Shown piece after piece: positions 20,742 to 28,276 of a stretch of DNA of 64,000 nucleotides. The stretch spans positions 248,001 through 312,000 of the forward strand of contig OX337241.1 of NCBI GenBank assembly GCA_946965045.2, in the 5' to 3' direction. Below the pieces are notes generated by a model. The model was not told where the DNA came from. It was given only the letters and a program-made list of their open reading frames with translations, and did not search any database. Position numbers and translations under genes: made by a program. Every line of letters starts with the position of its first letter. Positions within the stretch are counted from its first letter, which is position 1. The DNA is from Epithemia pelagica (Eukaryota > Protista > Bacillariophyta).

Positions 20742-22433
20742 CTACGACAAATCCCCATTGGCATCTCCACTACTTGGTGGAGCGACGGACGGTGTTGATG
20801 ATGACGGCGACAAGTTCCCCATGGCGTCTTGTTCTTGCAAGGACGGTGGTGCTTCTAAATGAACTTCCTTGAGAATCCCAATGCCTCGCACATGCCCCTC
20901 ACGTAAAATGACTCGCATTCCTTTCCGAATGTATTGTGGTCCTTGCAAAAAGGAAAAGACGGCACGTGCTCGTTGTCCAGGTCGCAACACGGTAGGTTGT
21001 GTTTTGGAGGCATCACGCGCCATGGCACGTCGTGTGGTGGTGGTTTCTGTAGTAGTAGAAGCTACCGCTGCGGCACCCGTGGCGTTGACATGAAGAATTT
21101 GAAAGTCTTCCAATCGGCACGTTTGTTTCAAATGCAAGATATGCATGGTCGTTTGGGTTTGTCCTCGCACCATGGTGACAGCGTCGCCCTTGGCCAAACA
21201 AATCTCGGCCGTAAAGGCTACAGCCGGTGGCGTCAAGGGTTCCTTTTGCATGACCATACCCTTTCGGGACAAGAGTCGTCGTTGTGGTTTGGTCAAGGCC
21301 ACGGCAAAGCAGGCGGCATGACCGGCCCAGACACGATCGACCAAGGTTTGGGCGACATGAATGGATTTGGCGACCGTTTTCATAAAGGTGGCATCTTTGA
21401 GGGGTCCAATATACAAGGTATCGCCCTTGTTGGCATGACCGGCATTGACAAAGCCCGACAAGACGGTTCCGACACCCGTCACATTGAAAATTTCTTCAAT
21501 CAAAAATTCAAACGGACGATCGTGCTTTTTGGAATGGATCCGACGTTTGGGTACCGTCCACAACAATTGTCGGACCAACTCCAATCCATTGCCCGTGACA
21601 CAGGAACATTCCAAAATGGGTGCCACGGCATGCGTCTTGTCACGTACCACGGACAAATCGTCGGTACTCCGTACGGCAAAGGGTTTTTTGCCAATATCCG
21701 GTGCTCTCAATGCTTGAGCAATGCGTTGTCGAGAATGCTTCAACACATTGGGTGGTGCCGCATCGACTTTGGTAATGACGACAATGACTGGAATACCACA
21801 CATGTGACAGAGGGACAAATGATGGACCGTCATGTAGGTTAAACCCTGAGAGGCATTGACCAAGACCAGGGCATAGTCGGCCATGCCTCGCGACAATCCA
21901 GCAATGGTGGTTTTGAAATACTTTTCGTGTCCAGCCAAATCGATCAAACTCACAGTTCGTGATTGGGCTTGTTTGGCCACATAGCGTTCGGCATAACGAC
22001 CAACACTCTTTGGAGGAATCACAGTTTGGCCGTGTTTGTCGTAGGCCAACAAGTGACTGGTAATTGTACTGGTCCGTCCGGATTCAACCTCATGCTTGAA
22101 CTTCGATACAAGCAAACGATTGGATCCATTGCCATCGTCTAGTTTGGAATGACACAAGGTCCCAATCAAGGTGGATTTACCGGCATCGACATTACCCACA
22201 ACGGCTACTCGTAAATGAAGATTGGACAAGAGTTCCAAAATATGACTCTGAGGATCCTCGTCCGTCGACGGTAACGACGAGGAAAGGAGACTTGTTGTTG
22301 TATTCAAGCTTGCCTTGTCCTCGGGTTCCTTCATCAGGTCGTCGGACGATGAGGAATGGGCCTCCTTCTTTTCAACCTCCTTCGCCACCACCATCTCTTC
22401 TTGTGGCTGTGGTGATGATGCGTGAGGCGACAT
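20742..22433 (-). CDS. GTPBP2: GTP-binding protein 1/2 family translational GTPase (563 aa)
   Basis: RVAVVGNVDAGKSTL (G1), KHEVESGRTSTI (G2), LIDLAGHEKYFKTT (G3), VITKVD (G4), followed by EF-Tu-like beta-barrel domains II/III. Confidence 0.92.
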   Translation of the reverse strand: MSPHASSPQPQEEMVVAKEVEKKEAHSSSSDDLMKEPEDKASLNTTTSLLSSSLPSTDEDPQSHILELLSNLHLRVAVVGNVDAGKSTLIGTLCHSKLDDGNGSNRLLVSKFKHEVESGRTSTITSHLLAYDKHGQTVIPPKSVGRYAERYVAKQAQSRTVSLIDLAGHEKYFKTTIAGLSRGMADYALVLVNASQGLTYMTVHHLSLCHMCGIPVIVVITKVDAAPPNVLKHSRQRIAQALRAPDIGKKPFAVRSTDDLSVVRDKTHAVAPILECSCVTGNGLELVRQLLWTVPKRRIHSKKHDRPFEFLIEEIFNVTGVGTVLSGFVNAGHANKGDTLYIGPLKDATFMKTVAKSIHVAQTLVDRVWAGHAACFAVALTKPQRRLLSRKGMVMQKEPLTPPAVAFTAEICLAKGDAVTMVRGQTQTTMHILHLKQTCRLEDFQILHVNATGAAAVASTTTETTTTRRAMARDASKTQPTVLRPGQRARAVFSFLQGPQYIRKGMRVILREGHVRGIGILKEVHLEAPPSLQEQDAMGNLSPSSSTPSVAPPSSGDANGDLS

Positions 22434-23403
22434 GAGAGAGAAAAAGAATGAGTTGGCTTCTCTCTTTCGGACTTGGGTCTTTGACGTTGAGGTGCAAACA
22501 ATCGGAAGAATGTGATTGCTTCTTGATGTATACGGTTGTCTTGAAAGTTTAGTTCTGCAGTAGTAGGTGATGCCTTGGAGCTTCTGCTAATAACAGGACC
22601 GATTCGGAGGAGTATGATAATAAGGATAATAACCTTGGTTCTAACTGCCTTGGTCGTAATAATCGGTGTTCTGCGTCGTAGTCGTTAATGATCGTAGTGT
22701 TCGTTGTGTTGTTGTTCCAAAAGATCTCGTCCATTGCCATGCACCGGTCGAGAGGAGGGAAAAAAGAGGCTTTTTTCTTCTTCTTCTTCTAGCTCCAACA
22801 GGGGACGCCAAAAGCAAAACCGTATAGAGCAATAATAAGAATTCGATCCACAAACAGAGAGTATCAATCTCTCTCTCTCGATAACAGTAGCAAGAACAAC
22901 AACAACCAGACTGGAGACTTGAGAGAGAGTTCCAGAACAGCAAAACAAAAGGGGATTGATTCAAAACAGCAACGTCCCAAAAGGAATGCTTGCAAGCACA
23001 GAATCGTTCCAAAGATGAAAACAAGGAGGGGGGTCTTTCAAAACACCAAACAGATATGTGATGTCTCGTCGTTCTGCTTCTTTTGCCGACAAAGATCGCT
23101 GTCGATGGATCTTTTTTTGGCATCGGTCTCGTCTACTTTTTACATCATAGTGGTTTTCTGCCAAACTGATTGGACTGAGATGGCGCCGCACCCGGATTGC
23201 GGGTGGGGATGTAAGGAGCTATGATGGAAGGAGACGTTCGTGAATCGTCGCTTATTTCATAGTTATGCTACATCTAACAACCACCACAGAAATCTCTCGA
23301 CGCTATAAACTTTTCAGTATGTAAAAAATATGGAGTATAGAGTCCATGCATATTACGAGAGAGGTTTACGACTACGGTTCTCCTAGATTGTGGGATTGTT
23401 TGA

Positions 23404-24731
23404 TTAGGCGACGACGGAAGGAGCAGTCATGGCCACGGGCAAGACTTCGCCACTGGCCAAATCCAAGGGAAAGTTGTGAGCGTTACGTTCGTGCATGACT
23501 TCCATACCCAAATCGGCGCGGTTGATAATGTCGGCCCAGGTGTTGATGACACGGCCCTGAGAGTCAATCACGGCTTGGTTAAAGTTGAATCCGTTCAAGT
23601 TAAAGGCCATGGTCGAGACACCCATGGCAGTCAACCAGATACCAATCACGGGCCAGGCGGCCAAGAAAAAGTGCAAGGCACGCGAGTTGTTGAAAGACGC
23701 GTATTGGAAGATGAGACGACCAAAGTATCCGTGGGCGGCGACAATGTTGTAGGTTTCTTCTTCTTGACCAAACTTGTAACCGTAGTTGGTGGATTCACTT
23801 TCGGTGGTTTCACGAATCAAGGAGGAAGTCACCAAGGAACCATGCATGGCAGAAAAGAGGGATCCACCAAAGACACCAGCAACACCAGCCATGTGGAAGG
23901 GGTGCATCAAAATGTTGTGTTCGGCTTGAAACACCAACATAAAGTTAAAGGTTCCGGAGATACCAAGGGGCATACCATCGGAGAAGGATCCTTGTCCAAT
24001 GGGGTAGTTGAGGAAGACAGCAGTGGCTGCAGCAACAGGGGCCGAAAAGGCGGTAAAGATCCAAGGGCGCATACCCAAACGGTAGGAAAGTTCCCATTCA
24101 CGGCCCATGTAGGCGGCCACACCAGTCAAAAAGTGCAAGACAATCAATTGGTATTCACCACCATTGTACAACCATTCATCCACCGAAGCAGCTTCCCAGA
24201 TGGGGTACAAGTGCATACCGATGGCGTTGGAAGAGGGGACAACGGCACCCGAAATAATGTTGTTACCATACAACAAGGATCCAGCAACGGGTTCACGGAT
24301 TCCATCAATATCGACTGTGGTAAATCAACAATGTTAGTGGACTCATTTCTCTTGTGGTTATCATTTTTTAGTCAAGGAGCGCACATACCGGGAGGAGCAG
24401 CGATAAAGGCGGTGATGAAGCAAGTGGTGGCGGCGAGCAAGGTGGGGAACATGAGGGTTCCAAACCATCCAATGTAGAGGCGGTTTTCGGTACTGGTGAT
24501 CCAGTTGGAAAACTTTTCCCAGACAGTGGCAGTGTTGCGCTTGGCGACAGCGTTCGTGTCCAAAGAGGCAGCCTTCAATTGGAAATCGGTCTCGGCCTCC
24601 ACATTGGTAGGAACAAAGGCAACGGCCGAAGACGAGGAAGTACGGGCGTTGGTGTTCAAAGGAGCAGGTGCGGTGAAAGCATTGGCTTGAGAAGCCAAAA
24701 GAGTGGCAACAATGGCAGTGGCGAACTTCAT
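23404..24731 (-). CDS. psbA: Nucleus-encoded photosystem II reaction-centre protein D1 with bipartite plastid-targeting presequence; exons 24389-24731 and 23404-24314, 417 aa
   Basis: Spliced product is a 57-aa presequence plus a 360-aa D1. With offset 57, residues D61, E65, H118, Y161, D170, E189, H190, H198, H215, H252, S264, H272, H332, E333, H337, D342 and A344 are all in register. Presequence [22 protein letters not shown]. Intron GTATGT...CACTAAC...CACAG. Confidence 0.98.
24315..24388 (-). other. 74-nt phase-1 spliceosomal intron in psbA
   Basis: 5' GTATGT, branch point CACTAAC, 3' CACAG. Removal restores [14 protein letters not shown] (codon G|TC); the unspliced frame hits a stop. Confidence 0.96.
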
Positions 24732-24763
24732 TTTTCTCTTGTTTTGGAAGATGAACTCGAAAT

Positions 24764-24853
24764 TGTGAGAACGGACAGTTCAGGACCGTCCCTGCATTTT
24801 GAAGAGAGGGGAACCCAACTATACTCTGACTCTGATGAGGAACACGTACGTGT
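24764..24853 (-). promoter_or_regulatory. Candidate psbA core promoter: TCACA initiator-like motif and ACACGTACGTGT palindrome
   Basis: TCACA on the minus strand at 24764-24768, 33 nt upstream of the ATG. Perfect 12-bp palindrome with two ACGT cores at 24842-24853. Function is inferred. Confidence 0.3.
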
Positions 24854-25432
24854 CGAGAATGAAGAACCTGCCCTGTGTCTTTGACAAGCATCCGTCGAAT
24901 CCTTGCCTTTGCAAACCGTGTTGCTAAGATACCAGCCAGCTGTCCATTCGACACAATTAGATTCTTTGCCAGTAGCATTACTAGCAAGTCGACCAGGACT
25001 GCTTGCGAGGCATTTGGCCTTTCTGTCGCAAAAATGAGCTGTTTGATCCATCAGCAAACGACCACGCAAAAATTGTATCTGCCGAAATAGGTAGAAGGAA
25101 GCCACATCAATTCCCAACACTGGGTCAGATCCTTCTTTCGATTCGACAGCTCAGATGTGTGTACCCTACTAGCCCTCTACAAATATACCATGCATGGGTA
25201 AACATTCATACATTCATCCCACCCATGTTCACAGTGCCATAGGAAGCGACGAAAGATTCCAAGTCAGATTGACAGACTGATGCCCTTTCTTCGTCGTGTC
25301 TTTATTACAGATGCGCTTATCAGTACAATAGCATCTATTGCGCATCTTTTCTGTGCGACTGAATCTCGCGATTCGGAAGCATCTTCCGCGAATTCCAGTC
25401 GCTTTTCATAAACGACCGTCACTCGTTATTCG

Positions 25433-28276
25433 TTACACACTGTCGAGTCCTTGGCGTTGACTCTCTCGGTGTCGTGCTTCTGCGTCGTCATCGTCATCTT
25501 CGTCAAAACTATCCTGAGAGTCCTCCAAATCATAATCCGGCCAACGAGTCGTCACGGACAGGAGCGAATCTTGTCGTTGCGGAGTCAAAGTTTCTGGTCG
25601 TCGTCGTTCTGGTGAACCACTACTAGGTTCCTGCAAATCGGAAAAGGTTTGATAAATGCGTTCTTGTTGAATCGCCCAAAAGGATGAAAAGGATGACAAT
25701 GGATACGCTAGCAAATGATCTTGTGAATCGTCCGATCGCGACGTGACCAACGTGGTCGCAGTCGACGACCGCACTGTTCCAGAAGAAGAGGGACGCACAT
25801 GTCGTTGTGGCCGTCGTGGTCGAGGTGACGATCGCGGTGGCGAAGACCGTGATCGCTGTAGTAAAGGAGAAGACGAGGAAGGTCGCTGTCGACGACCCAT
25901 GGTTCGTTGCTGAGATGATGATGAGGGACGGAACGGCCATTCTGGCACGTCTCCTTCATGTTGCGGTAAGGCGTCGCTCGAGGATGCGCGGAGCCGTTGG
26001 GCATACCAGGCTCGAGAAAGGCGTTGTGTCGTGCTGCTAGGAGTAGCATCCGTGGCGCTGTTGCTGTTAGAGTTGCTGTCATTGTTGGTTCGATGAGTTG
26101 TACGAATGTTGTGGCGTGAGGATGGAGCATGTGGAACTCGTGGAAGTGGCCGTATCGGTCTCTGCAGTTGCGAATTTTGTTGTTGTTGGGCCAGTATTTG
26201 TCCCACAATATGAGCAAAAGACCCAGAAGACGAGTCATCATCATCATTGCCCCCCTCCTCATCGTCATCGTGGTCTTCACTCATGGTGCTGTCATTGTCC
26301 AGAGGACTCGTCGTGGTGAAAGGATTGCGACGAGCCTGTGGTTTGAACATTTCTACCCGACGTCGACATACAGGACAGGTCAATTGATCTCGTTCACAAT
26401 GACATGCCCACTCCTCCCAACATGTCGTATCAAATACATGACCACAGGGAAGTAGCTTCAACGGAAGACCATCCGAGCCGACCATTCTCCCTACTTGATG
26501 ATGTTTATGCTTGGACAACAATGGCAGTGTTTCACCGCGGCCACTTCTATATTGAAAGCTTTCCAAACAAATGGGACAACAGGTTGCCTTGAATTTCCCT
26601 TGAAGGGCCCGTCCAGCATGAATCAAATCCCATTGGTTTTGTACCATGCGGAGCCACCGCTTGGTATCGTCACACCATGTGTGACATTCGCGGCAAGTGA
26701 TGGTACCAAGACTGGCCACAACACAGCACTGAAAACACCAGGCGACCGCTACCGCAATGGCGGCCAACCATCCCAAGGAAATCCACCACCAATTCTTTTT
26801 GTTTTTCGTAGTATTACTTGTAGGATTGGTCGATGCCTCGTCGCCGTCCTCCCGATTGTTGTCGTCTGTTTCTGAATCGGATAGTACTTCTTGCTCGTCG
26901 TCCTCACTATCCGCTTCATCCGTAGACACGGATCTTTGGCCCTTGGATTGGGTTCCATTGTTGCTCACGAGAAGATGCTCTTGACCATTTTCAATCTCAT
27001 GCACCTCCTCCAACCCAACTTCAGGAGCAGCGTTTGGTTCCTTGGAATGTACTCCAGCGTCCTGTGCTGTCAGATGATTTGGTGTCGACGACGACATTGT
27101 TGGTTGTCCATTCTGGGTTTTATCTTTCTCCAAACTCTGTCCCACCAAAATGGAATTTGGGTCGCTGGTTGTTGTTGCGGACGACGATTCCTTGGGTTGA
27201 GCTTCCAAAAACCACTGGACTGTTTCTTGAATGGCTCGGACCACCTCGCCCTGTTGCATCAACGTCGTCAACGAGTATTTGAGCGTGATCCACCCGCTAC
27301 TGTCGTCGTCGTCATTGGGGGATCTCGGAGGAAGAGGGTGGAGGGGATTCACCGAAATGGTACGCCGGACCGTTGGAGAATGAACATAGATAAAGGCTTG
27401 TTGGTCCGTTGGAGAAATGACCAATAGATCGAAGGACGAGGGTTTGACCTCGGTGGTAAAAAAGCGATAGAGTAGACCCGTAAACGTTCCAATGTCACAA
27501 CGGTCTCGGTCGCAATCCACTCCGAACCACTGTGTGATCCAAATGAGGCGACCACACAAGCATCATGAGGGTGACTGTCCATGAGCAACCACAGTGACAC
27601 AATCGGTACAACACAAACATATCTTACGTACCACGTAAGGTAAGGCGTTTTGTTTGTGCACAGACCGTTCGGGAGGCAAAATCACCACCACCACCATTGG
27701 GGCCGTAGTAGTATTCGTTGTAGAATCCGGCGCCAGATTGCGAATGGTTTGACGTTCCATGGCGGTCAATGTGGCACTGGGATCGCACAGGGTGACCAGC
27801 TCCTCGTGACGACTCGCGTTATTATTATTATTATTGTTGTTGTTGGTATCGTCCAGGAACCGACGACCGCATTCCTCAAACGGCGTCAACCATTGGCGTT
27901 CTCGTTCTTGATGGATTCGGTGCGCAACCGACAAGTGAGCCGATACGGTACCACTGGTATCATACGGACCGTCGTTCCAATGGTCGGACAAATGGTAGTG
28001 CGAATCATGGTACGACGAATGGTACGAGCCATGGTTGGACGAATGATCATACGAATCATGGTACGACAAATGATGGTAGGAAGAATGACTCCGGGATGCG
28101 ACACCGGCCTGTCGCTGGGAGACCAATGCCGTCGCAAACGTAAACAGAGAACTAGGAATCAGCACAACAATCACGGTCACGGCCACCAGGAGGTACCAGG
28201 GAAGACGACCGAAAAAAAAAGAAGAAGAAGAAGAACCACCACCACGACTCCATCCTGGTTGCCCGGTTGTCCTCAT
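25433..28276 (-). CDS. TPM/MOLO1-like domain, transmembrane helix and RING finger protein; intron 27530-27631
   Basis: Donor GTACGT at 27631 and acceptor CACAG at 27530 join two ORFs in frame. Hydrophobic N-terminus, ECGRR..LCDPSATLT and DLLVISPTDQQAFI (TPM-like), TM segment WWWISLGWLAAIAVAVAW, RING CPIC...CGHVFDTTC...CPVC. Confidence 0.75.

What the first reader, a model, noticed from the sequence alone, without database searches (positions are those of the whole stretch)
23920..24460. Hydrophobic-to-polar substitutions clustered in D1 helices A-C, a possible import adaptation
Seen, in D1 numbering: T35, T50, E111, T121, T145 and N160. Canonical plastid D1, recalled from memory, has V/C35, I50, P111, L121, V145 and I/V160. 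All fall in or at the edges of the first three TM helices, while helices D and E and the QB loop look nearly canonical. N160 is adjacent to redox-active TyrZ (Y161). Established: relocated organellar membrane-protein genes (cox2, cox3, atp6 in chlamydomonad algae; legume cox2) show reduced TM hydrophobicity that permits import. Inference: the same constraint acted here, which would directly test the hydrophobicity hypothesis for D1; the variant could also have altered photochemistry.
Basis: partly seen in the sequence, partly recalled or inferred. Interest (0 to 1): 0.8.

Follow-up and report, generated by a model that had tools for sequence, protein, structure and literature searches.

The report
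Polar signature in nuclear-encoded D1
A diatom nuclear gene for the photosystem II core protein D1 carries a small, conserved set of polar substitutions in its first three membrane helices. These mark an old family of imported D1 proteins, but only one of the three helices is clearly less hydrophobic, so the simple "less hydrophobic, therefore importable" idea is only partly borne out.

Summary
All six residues (T35, T50, E111, T121, T145, N160) are present in a 417-aa, intron-containing, presequence-bearing nuclear psbA (minus strand, 23404-24731).

In about 60 nuclear-type D1 proteins from raphid pennate diatoms, T35 is universal, T50 is usual, and position 160 is always T or N. About 55 plastid and cyanobacterial D1s have C/V, I and V/I there. 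E111, T145 and N160 are later additions in a sub-clade. T121 also occurs in plastid D1s and is ordinary variation.

Only 7 of 335 positions are diagnostic of the nuclear family; 6 lie in helices A-C and none in D/E. The gene is under strong purifying selection (dN/dS 0.02-0.07) and every cofactor ligand checked is intact.

The host keeps a canonical plastid psbA (C35, I50, P111, I121 read; 145/160 unread).

Net hydrophobicity against the nearest plastid D1s is unchanged in helix A (C35T and I50T are offset by T43A, S46T and Y48F), unchanged or slightly raised in B, and clearly lower only in C. Nuclear D1s also lose cysteines, from about 3 to 1.

Import or biogenesis adaptation is plausible but not shown; isoform tuning is a serious rival. 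The scan noted the same idea on a paralogue about 72 kb away.

The parts
23404..24731 (-). Nuclear psbA (D1) gene: exon 1 24731-24389, intron 24388-24315 (74 nt, GT..AG, phase 1 after D1 codon 57), exon 2 24314-23407, stop 23406-23404. Product 417 aa.
   Evidence: Exon 2 matches diatom D1 6JLU at E = 4.6e-192. The only D1 copy in the window.
24561..24731 (-). 57-aa presequence (signal peptide ...ASQANA|FTAP plus a transit-like part) that replaces D1 residues 1-9.
   Evidence: The same architecture occurs in about 60 homologues. Not the subject of this finding.
24399..24470 (-). TM helix A (D1 31-54) with T35 (24458-24456), A43 (24434-24432), T46 (24425-24423) and T50 (24413-24411). All four lie on one helical face (0-80 degrees).
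   Evidence: Net ddG +0.04 against both the near-plastid consensus and the host plastid D1.
24504..24509 (-). S18 and N19 in the stromal N-terminal tail. C18 is lost; N19 is present in 46 of 47 distinct nuclear D1s.
24079..24159 (-). TM helix B (D1 110-136) with E111 (24156-24154) at its lumenal cap and T121 (24126-24124).
   Evidence: E111 occurs in 39/60 nuclear D1s and in no plastid D1. T121 occurs in 16/60 nuclear D1s and in 11 of 55 distinct plastid-type D1s.
23992..24063 (-). TM helix C (D1 142-165) with T145 (24054-24052) and N160 (24009-24007), next to TyrZ Y161. The only helix with a clear net loss of hydrophobicity.
   Evidence: Position 145 is V in 54/55 plastid/cyanobacterial D1s and position 160 is V or I in 55/55. 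Nuclear D1s have T or N at 160 in 60/60 and T145 in 17/60. ddG +2.87 here and +1.02 as the family mean, above zero in all 47 distinct nuclear D1s.

Best explanation
The six residues belong to a derived, selectively maintained signature of an old family of nucleus-encoded, plastid-targeted D1 paralogues in raphid pennate diatoms.

A core set is shared by nearly the whole family: loss of C18 and C35, N19, T35, A43, T46, T50, and a hydroxyl or amide residue at 160. Because it is so widely shared it was probably acquired early, soon after the gene moved to the nucleus (inferred). E111, T145 and the T160-to-N change are confined to the sub-clade that includes this gene. T121 is ordinary variation at a tolerant site.

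The most likely role (inferred, not shown) is to fit D1 to its new biogenesis route. Instead of co-translational insertion at the thylakoid, the protein is made on ER-bound ribosomes, crosses Sec61, the periplastid and envelope translocons in an unfolded state, and is inserted post-translationally. Two features fit this route. Cysteines fall to a single residue, so no intramolecular disulfide can form in the oxidising ER lumen. Helix C becomes markedly more polar towards its ends.

It is not a general lowering of transmembrane hydrophobicity. Helix A is remodelled along one naturally variable face with no net change, and helix B is essentially unchanged.
For: Shown:
- Residues and gene model.
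- Family-wide conservation of T35 (60/60), T50 (50/60) and T/N160 (60/60), against C/V, I and V/I in 55 plastid/cyanobacterial D1s.
- Only 7 of 335 positions are diagnostic and 6 of them lie in TM A-C.
- A tree with nuclear D1 held as one clade has a log-likelihood 14.35 higher than the free quick tree (AU test p = 0.64, so the clade is not rejected).
- A phase-1 intron at D1 codon 57/58 is shared with Epithemia clementina and Seminavis robusta.
- dN/dS is 0.018 and 0.065 at dS of about 1, and 21 of 21 cofactor or catalytic residues are intact.
- Helix C ddG is positive in all 47 distinct nuclear D1s, and +2.87 here.
- Kyte-Doolittle mesohydrophobicity is 0.987 (nuclear) against 1.049 (near plastid); this gene scores 0.960 and has the lowest maximum 17-residue value, 1.888.
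- 39 of 47 distinct nuclear D1s have exactly one Cys, against mostly 3-6 in plastid types.
- The host plastid psbA is present with C18, G19, C35, T43, S46, I50, P111 and I121.
- Orthologues appear in MMETSP transcriptomes.
Against: - Net hydrophobicity of helix A is unchanged (+0.02 family, +0.04 here). The one central change, T43A, favours membrane insertion.
- Helix B is -0.48 against the nearest plastid consensus.
- Positions 35, 43, 46, 50 and 121 are among the most variable in all D1s (87th-99th percentile of entropy), so part of the clustering simply reflects tolerance. This gene's full set of differences is not enriched in A-C after that correction (p = 0.72).
- Unmodified psbA expressed from the nucleus is reported to work in plants (review PMC11355022). 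Hydrophobicity is therefore not an absolute barrier, at least for primary plastids.
- The plastid copy persists, so functional specialisation is equally open.
- C47 is retained, so any cysteine purge is incomplete.
- No import or localisation data exist.
Confidence: 0.45

Rival explanations
1. Isoform tuning. Nuclear D1 is a second, nucleus-controlled D1 isoform that coexists with plastid D1. On this view the substitutions adjust function or partner contacts rather than import. Candidates are packing next to TyrZ (160, 145), the ChlZ/carotenoid/PsbI side of helix A, and the lumenal cap of helix B. The parallel is the few-residue differences between cyanobacterial D1 isoforms.
For: The host keeps a canonical plastid psbA at about 1200-1500 contig depth, beside nuclear-type pieces at 100-230. 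Positions 145 and 160 are essentially invariant (V; V/I) in all plastid and cyanobacterial D1s, yet they are the ones changed, next to Y161. The four helix-A changes lie on one face and compensate each other in hydrophobicity, which looks like a remodelled surface. Further change at 160 (T to N) is confined to one sub-clade.
Against: The classical tuning site 130 is E in both nuclear and plastid diatom D1. Helices D and E, the QB pocket and all Mn/Ca, Fe, P680 and pheophytin ligands checked are unchanged. No expression or biophysical data were obtained. The sites could not be mapped on a PSII structure here.
Confidence: 0.3
2. Founder effect at tolerant sites. Most of the signature (35, 43, 46, 50, 121) is neutral or nearly neutral variation. 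It happened to be fixed in the single transferred copy or soon after, and is now frozen by ordinary purifying selection or epistasis, with no role in import or function.
For: These positions rank at the 87th-99th percentile of variability among plastid and cyanobacterial D1s, with S/T/C/A/V/I all seen. T121 toggles at least 14 times on the tree and occurs in plastid D1s. There is no net hydrophobicity change in helix A.
Against: T35 is kept in 60/60 nuclear D1s while plastid D1s toggle between C and V. Polar 160 is kept in 60/60 against 0/55, at a site that otherwise admits only V or I. V145T hits a site that is V in 54/55. 6 of 7 diagnostic sites fall in TM A-C even after weighting for variability (p = 0.018). 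dS of about 1 or more between copies gave ample time for reversal.
Confidence: 0.2
3. Decay. The gene is a degenerating nuclear plastid-DNA insert (NUPT) and the polar residues are damage under relaxed selection.
Against: The reading frame is intact. It has a spliceosomal intron shared with other genera, a conserved bipartite presequence, dN/dS of 0.018-0.065, 21/21 essential residues intact, GC 0.52 against 0.38-0.42 for plastid psbA, and about 77% nucleotide identity to plastid psbA.
Confidence: 0.02

Closest known systems
Nucleus-relocated mitochondrial membrane-protein genes with lowered TM hydrophobicity (legume cox2; chlamydomonad cox2a/b, cox3, atp6). Recalled from the literature, not re-read here.
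   Same: An organelle-derived gene for a multi-span core membrane protein now sits in the nucleus with an intron and a targeting presequence. It carries derived hydrophobic-to-polar substitutions in TM helices relative to the organelle-encoded form.
   Different: Net hydrophobicity falls in only one of three affected helices. The organelle copy is retained. The route goes through the ER and four membranes of a complex plastid. Cysteine loss accompanies the changes. No import assay exists.
Cyanobacterial psbA multigene families (D1:1, D1:2, D1' and rogue D1 isoforms). Recalled knowledge.
   Same: Two or more D1 genes sit in one organism, differing at a handful of residues while all ligands are kept.
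   Different: Here the isoforms are split between two genomes. The known tuning site Q/E130 does not differ. The differences sit in helices A-C rather than around pheophytin and QB.
Engineered nuclear expression of psbA with a transit peptide in Arabidopsis, tobacco and rice (summarised in PMC11355022).
   Same: D1 made in the cytosol and imported into plastids alongside the plastid-encoded copy.
   Different: That case is artificial, uses an unmodified D1 sequence and concerns a primary plastid with two envelope membranes. The diatom gene is natural and old, and carries a conserved substitution signature.
Thalassiosira pseudonana psb28, with plastid and nuclear copies and a bipartite presequence on the nuclear one (PMC2950852, listed).
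   Same: A diatom PSII-related gene with both a plastid copy and a nuclear, presequence-bearing copy.
   Different: Psb28 is a small peripheral protein without TM helices, so hydrophobicity is not at issue.

Membership tests
Photosystem II D1 (psbA; Pfam PF00124 Photo_RC) | Full-length sequence similarity to experimentally solved D1 | tested here: met
   Exon 2 against 6JLU chain A: E = 4.6e-192, aligned 1-300 to 59-358. Database homologues carry PF00124.
Photosystem II D1 (psbA; Pfam PF00124 Photo_RC) | Cofactor and Mn4CaO5 ligands, TyrZ/H190, and the C-terminal processing site at A344 | tested here: met
   D61, E65, H118, E130, Y161, Q165, D170, E189, H190, H198, H215, H252, F255, S264, H272, N298, H332, E333, H337, D342 and A344 are all present. 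A 16-aa extension follows A344.
Relocated organellar membrane-protein genes adapted by reduced TM hydrophobicity | Nuclear gene with a spliceosomal intron and a targeting presequence | tested here: met
   74-nt GT..AG intron and a 57-aa signal-plus-transit leader. The intron position is shared with E. clementina and S. robusta.
Relocated organellar membrane-protein genes adapted by reduced TM hydrophobicity | Derived polar substitutions in TM helices relative to the organelle-encoded homologue of the same lineage | tested here: met
   Met at 35, 50 and 111 against the host plastid D1, and at 145 and 160 against all 55 plastid/cyanobacterial D1s. At 121 the host plastid has I, but T121 occurs in 11 of 55 plastid-type D1s, so it is not nuclear-specific.
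Relocated organellar membrane-protein genes adapted by reduced TM hydrophobicity | Net reduction of hydrophobicity in the affected TM helices | tested here: inconclusive
   Helix A +0.04, B -0.28 (consensus) or +1.13 (host), C +2.87 kcal/mol on the Hessa-2005 scale. Kyte-Doolittle mesohydrophobicity is 0.96 against 1.05. The GES maximum 17-residue value is unchanged. Clear only for helix C.
Relocated organellar membrane-protein genes adapted by reduced TM hydrophobicity | Organelle copy lost or non-functional (completed relocation) | tested here: not met
   Runs X1, X2 and X4 of the same organism hold a plastid-type psbA contig. It covers L003:1452-2585 in X1 and X2 and 1490-2579 in X4, at about 93% identity, with depth 1214, 1502 and 112.
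Relocated organellar membrane-protein genes adapted by reduced TM hydrophobicity | Substitutions shown to be needed for import | not testable with these tools
   Needs reversion mutants with localisation or import assays.
D1 isoform systems (functionally distinct psbA paralogues) | Two or more D1 genes in one organism | tested here: met
Nuclear and plastid copies. Seven nuclear paralogues are listed for E. clementina.
D1 isoform systems (functionally distinct psbA paralogues) | Difference at known functional tuning sites (e.g. Q/E130), or differential expression | tested here: not met
   E130 in both forms. Differential expression was not tested.

The most novel reading that the evidence does not exclude
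A handful of substitutions is what makes the PSII reaction-centre protein D1 transportable across the ER and the four plastid membranes, and insertable post-translationally. The set is loss of C18 and C35, T35, T50, polar 160, later T145 and E111. If so, these residues form a natural, minimal recipe for nuclear encoding of psbA. They would also allow a direct experimental contrast between import-constraint and redox-control (CoRR) explanations for why psbA is otherwise always kept in plastid genomes.
Probability: 0.2. Interest if true: 0.9.

Novelty: new variant of a known kind. Interest (0 to 1): 0.7.

Why it matters
psbA is the textbook gene that is never moved out of the plastid. Hydrophobicity and import limits are one classical explanation for that; redox control of expression is the other.

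A natural, conserved, imported D1 that differs from plastid D1 at only about seven family-wide positions gives a short and experimentally tractable list of candidate enabling changes. The analysis also shows that the simple prediction of lower hydrophobicity in all affected helices does not hold. Only helix C is clearly more polar, helix A is remodelled without net change, and cysteines are removed. That shifts attention to ER-lumen passage and post-translational assembly in complex plastids.

Because the plastid copy is retained, the case also raises the possibility of a nucleus-controlled D1 isoform with altered surroundings of TyrZ.

Tried and rejected
I did not reconstruct ancestors by other means. 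I used consensus comparisons of living sequences and minimum change counts from treekit instead.
2. The quick ML tree placed the long cyanobacterial branch inside the nuclear clade at an unsupported fork. The tree with nuclear D1 constrained as one clade has a higher likelihood, so I treat that placement as a search or long-branch artefact.
3. Reading the whole host plastid D1 from read laying failed. The table shows only 40 of 145 difference rows, apparently complete up to L003:1902 (codon 134). Codons 145 and 160 could not be read. No stored protein or locus matches the inferred host N-terminal 134 aa exactly; the best is 128/134, and all of the nearest have V145 and V/I160.
4. Laying plastid reads directly on the window gene was rejected, because nuclear and plastid psbA share only about 76-78% nucleotide identity.
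5. A literature search for structural contacts of D1 residues 35, 50 and 160 found nothing relevant. Searches for a described natural nuclear psbA in diatoms found none.
6. The full position-dependent Hessa-2007 dG predictor was not used, because I could not recall its parameters reliably.
7. The pseudogene/NUPT reading was rejected.

Full report
**What is there.**
The minus strand between 23404 and 24731 holds a psbA gene in two exons. Exon 1 is 24731-24389 and exon 2 is 24314-23407, separated by a 74-nt GT..AG intron. The 417-aa product begins with a 57-aa leader (signal peptide ending ...ASQANA|FTAP plus a transit-like part), then continues as D1 from about residue 10. D1 numbering is residue number minus 57. 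Exon 2 matches the solved D1 of Chaetoceros gracilis (6JLU) at E = 4.6e-192 and that of Thalassiosira pseudonana (8IWH) at 1.2e-185. It is the only D1 copy in the window. Window GC is 0.44-0.52. The gene's D1-coding part (from D1 codon 1) has GC 0.52, against 0.38-0.42 for diatom plastid psbA, and the two share only 74-78% nucleotide identity.

**The observation.**
All six residues are present, with these codons:
- T35: ACC, 24458-24456
- T50: ACC, 24413-24411
- E111: GAA, 24156-24154
- T121: ACT, 24126-24124
- T145: ACC, 24054-24052
- N160: AAC, 24009-24007

The states in 55 distinct plastid-type and cyanobacterial D1s are:
- position 35: V 28, C 25
- position 50: I 46
- position 111: P 47, T 8
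- position 121: I 32, T 11, L 9
- position 145: V 54, L 1
- position 160: V 34, I 21

The claim that helices D and E and the QB loop are nearly canonical also holds. Against the nearest plastid consensus, helix D has 0 differences, helix E has four conservative ones (L277A, L281I, S287A, I290V), and the QB region has only N230S.

**It is a family signature, not a peculiarity of this gene.**
The protein search returned dozens of D1 proteins of 403-457 aa that all start with a signal peptide and an A|F-type cleavage motif. Cluster look-up added more. Named sources are:
- Epithemia clementina (seven paralogues, 97-98% identical to this gene's exon-2 product)
- Nitzschia inconspicua
- Nitzschia sp. 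RCC80
- a Bacillariaceae metagenome-assembled genome
- Pseudo-nitzschia australis
- Amphora coffeiformis
- Entomoneis sp. CCMP467
- Seminavis robusta

All are raphid pennate diatoms. Several of these sequences come from MMETSP transcriptomes, so the family is expressed. In 60 nuclear-type D1s the key positions read as follows:
- T35: 60/60
- T50: 50/60
- position 160: T or N in 60/60, never V or I
- E111: 39/60
- T145: 17/60
- N160: 13/60
- T121: 16/60

I scanned all 335 aligned positions for states held by a majority of nuclear D1s but rare in plastid D1s. Only seven emerge: A/G19N, C35T, T43A, S46T, I50T, P111E and V160T. Six of the seven lie in TM helices A-C and none in D/E. The binomial p is 7e-4 by length, and 0.018 when each position is weighted by its natural variability.

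Two results argue for one old transfer. First, a tree with the nuclear D1s held as one clade has a log-likelihood 14.35 higher than the free quick tree (AU test p = 0.64). Second, the phase-1 intron after D1 codon 57 is shared by this gene, E. clementina and S. robusta.

**Selection.**
Against E. clementina P0024 the D1 core has dS 0.995, dN 0.0175 and dN/dS 0.018. Against S. robusta, dN/dS is 0.065. All 21 ligand or catalytic residues checked are intact. The pseudogene or relaxed-selection reading is therefore excluded. The polar residues have been retained over synonymous divergence that is near saturation.

**The host's own plastid D1.**
Four runs of the same coded organism hold the window region. 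I laid them on a diatom plastid psbA locus from a metagenome (L003). X1, X2 and X4 each give a contig across the gene: L003:1452-2585 in X1 and X2 with 83 differences, and 1490-2579 in X4 with 77 differences. That is about 93% identity, at depth 1214, 1502 and 112. Short nuclear-type pieces lie beside it at depth 100-230, and their loose ends match the window gene. The plastid copy is therefore retained.

Applying the listed differences gives host plastid D1 residues 1-134 with C18, G19, C35, T43, S46, Y48, I50, P111, I121, C124 and A125.

There is a caveat. Only 40 of 145 difference rows were printed, apparently complete up to codon 134. That completeness is my inference from the counts, and codons 145 and 160 could not be read. 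Every plastid D1 examined has V (once L) at 145 and V or I at 160, including the 20 closest to the host sequence.

**Is helix hydrophobicity reduced?**
Against all plastid and cyanobacterial D1s pooled, helices A, B and C of nuclear D1s are less hydrophobic and D and E are not. That contrast is confounded by phylogeny, because diatom plastid D1s are themselves less hydrophobic in A and B than other lineages.

Against the nearest plastid-type consensus, the summed Hessa-2005 ddG is:

| Helix | Nuclear family mean | This gene |
|---|---|---|
| A | +0.02 | +0.04 |
| B | -0.48 | -0.28 |
| C | +1.02 (positive in 47/47) | +2.87 |
| D | -0.38 | 0.00 |
| E | +0.09 | +0.17 |

Against the inferred host plastid D1, helix A is +0.04 and helix B (110-134) is +1.13.

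In helix A the polar gains are C35T (+0.65) and I50T (+1.12). They are cancelled by T43A (-0.41), S46T (-0.32) and Y48F (-1.0). T43A sits at the centre of the helix, where polarity matters most for translocon recognition, whereas T35 and T50 sit near the ends. That weighting is an inference from the known position dependence of the Sec61 scale.

Whole-protein measures move slightly in the predicted direction:
- Kyte-Doolittle mesohydrophobicity: 0.987 (nuclear) against 1.049 (near plastid); this gene 0.960.
- Kyte-Doolittle maximum over 17 residues: 2.116 against 2.189; this gene 1.888, the lowest seen.
- GES maximum over 17 residues: unchanged.

**Where the sites sit.**
Positions 35, 43, 46 and 50 fall within an 80-degree arc of the helix A wheel. 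Positions 145 and 160 fall within 60 degrees on helix C, on the Ala-rich face opposite F147, P150, F158 and Y161. Positions 35, 43, 46, 50 and 121 are among the most variable in all D1s (87th-99th percentile). Position 145 is nearly invariant and 160 admits only V or I. The helix A changes therefore occupy a naturally tolerant face, while the helix C changes hit conserved sites. I could not map the residues onto a PSII structure, because no coordinates are available and a literature search for contacts found nothing.

**A second regularity: cysteine loss.**
Nuclear D1s have a mean of 1.0 Cys in residues 10-344, and 39 of 47 have exactly one, C47. The nearest plastid D1s have 2.9, other plastid D1s 4.0 and cyanobacterial D1s 3.75. 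C18 and C35 are the ones lost. C35T may therefore be about removing a thiol rather than adding polarity. For example, it could prevent intramolecular disulfides during passage through the ER lumen (inference).

**Interpretation.**
The best-supported reading is that these residues are a selected signature of nuclear encoding. Most of it is shared by nearly the whole family, and a part is confined to the sub-clade containing this gene. I rate adaptation to the new biogenesis route as most likely (about 0.45). That route is ER passage, unfolded transit through several translocons and post-translational thylakoid insertion. Simple hydrophobicity reduction is shown only for helix C.

A serious rival (about 0.3) is functional or assembly tuning of a second, nucleus-controlled D1 isoform, given that the plastid gene persists and the conserved sites 145 and 160 flank TyrZ. 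A neutral founder effect at tolerant sites (about 0.2) can explain 121 and perhaps 43 and 46. It fits poorly with the 60/60 retention of T35 and of polar 160.

Reports that unmodified psbA expressed from plant nuclei is functional (summarised in PMC11355022) argue that hydrophobicity is not an absolute barrier in primary plastids. They say nothing about the Sec61 step of complex plastids.

**Novelty.**
Four literature searches found no paper describing a natural nuclear psbA in diatoms, although public annotations already name the proteins. Earlier notes of this scan cover three related items: the gene and its leader, a truncated paralogue about 72 kb before the window, and the same polar-substitution idea on that paralogue. 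The hydrophobicity precedent (cox2, cox3, atp6) is recalled knowledge and was not re-read here.

**Limits.**
- The 'near plastid' comparator is a consensus of 14 metagenomic and plastid-type sequences chosen from the tree, not a known donor.
- Counts across sequences are not phylogenetically independent.
- The organism is coded. Its nearest named relative is Epithemia clementina, but dS of about 1 shows this is a different species or an old paralogue.

Noticed in passing
window 23407-24560 (D1 residues 10-344); proteins P0016-P0193: Nuclear-type D1s are depleted of cysteine. 39 of 47 distinct sequences keep exactly one Cys (C47), while plastid and cyanobacterial D1s mostly have 3-6. C18 and C35 are the residues lost. 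This may relate to passage through the oxidising ER lumen.
   Followed up: partly
window 24315-24388; L081:1844-1920; L083:1874-1953: The phase-1 intron after D1 codon 57 is shared by this gene, Epithemia clementina P0024 and Seminavis robusta P0185. Each of those two has a second intron at a different place (after codon 246 and after codon 281) that this gene lacks. The intron structure of Nitzschia inconspicua P0036 could not be resolved by my script.
   Followed up: partly
L003:1452-2585 laid with runs X1-X4: The host retains a plastid-type psbA (about 93% identical to L003) at contig depth of about 1200-1500. Nuclear-type psbA pieces lie at about 100-230. The nuclear D1 therefore coexists with plastid D1.
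   Followed up: yes
window 22800-25400: Marine and aquatic metatranscriptome runs, some poly-A selected (X5-X11), hold 10-24% of the sampled 31-mers of this stretch. That hints at near-identical transcripts in the environment.
   Followed up: no
window 24534-24560 (D1 residues 1-9): The native D1 N-terminus (MTATLERRQ in the host plastid copy) is replaced by DTNAVAKRN at the junction with the presequence. The conserved Thr2 is therefore absent, and the mature N-terminus must be created by transit-peptide cleavage.
   Followed up: no
about 72.5 kb before the window start (earlier notes s1-226330, s1-226417): A second nuclear psbA copy in the same genome is reported to be cut short by a premature stop. 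The same polar-substitution idea was noted there.
   Followed up: no
window 20742-22433 (-) and 25433-27559 (-): The flanking long ORFs are ordinary-looking eukaryotic genes, consistent with a nuclear chromosomal context. One is a GTP-binding elongation-factor-like protein and the other a Ser/Asp-rich protein with a RING-type Cys/His motif. Both calls were made by eye from the translations only.
   Followed up: no
tree: In the quick ML tree the cyanobacterial D1 branch (length 0.17) attaches inside the nuclear clade at an unsupported fork. The constrained tree with nuclear D1 monophyletic is better by 14.35 log-likelihood units, so this is probably a search or long-branch artefact.
   Followed up: partly
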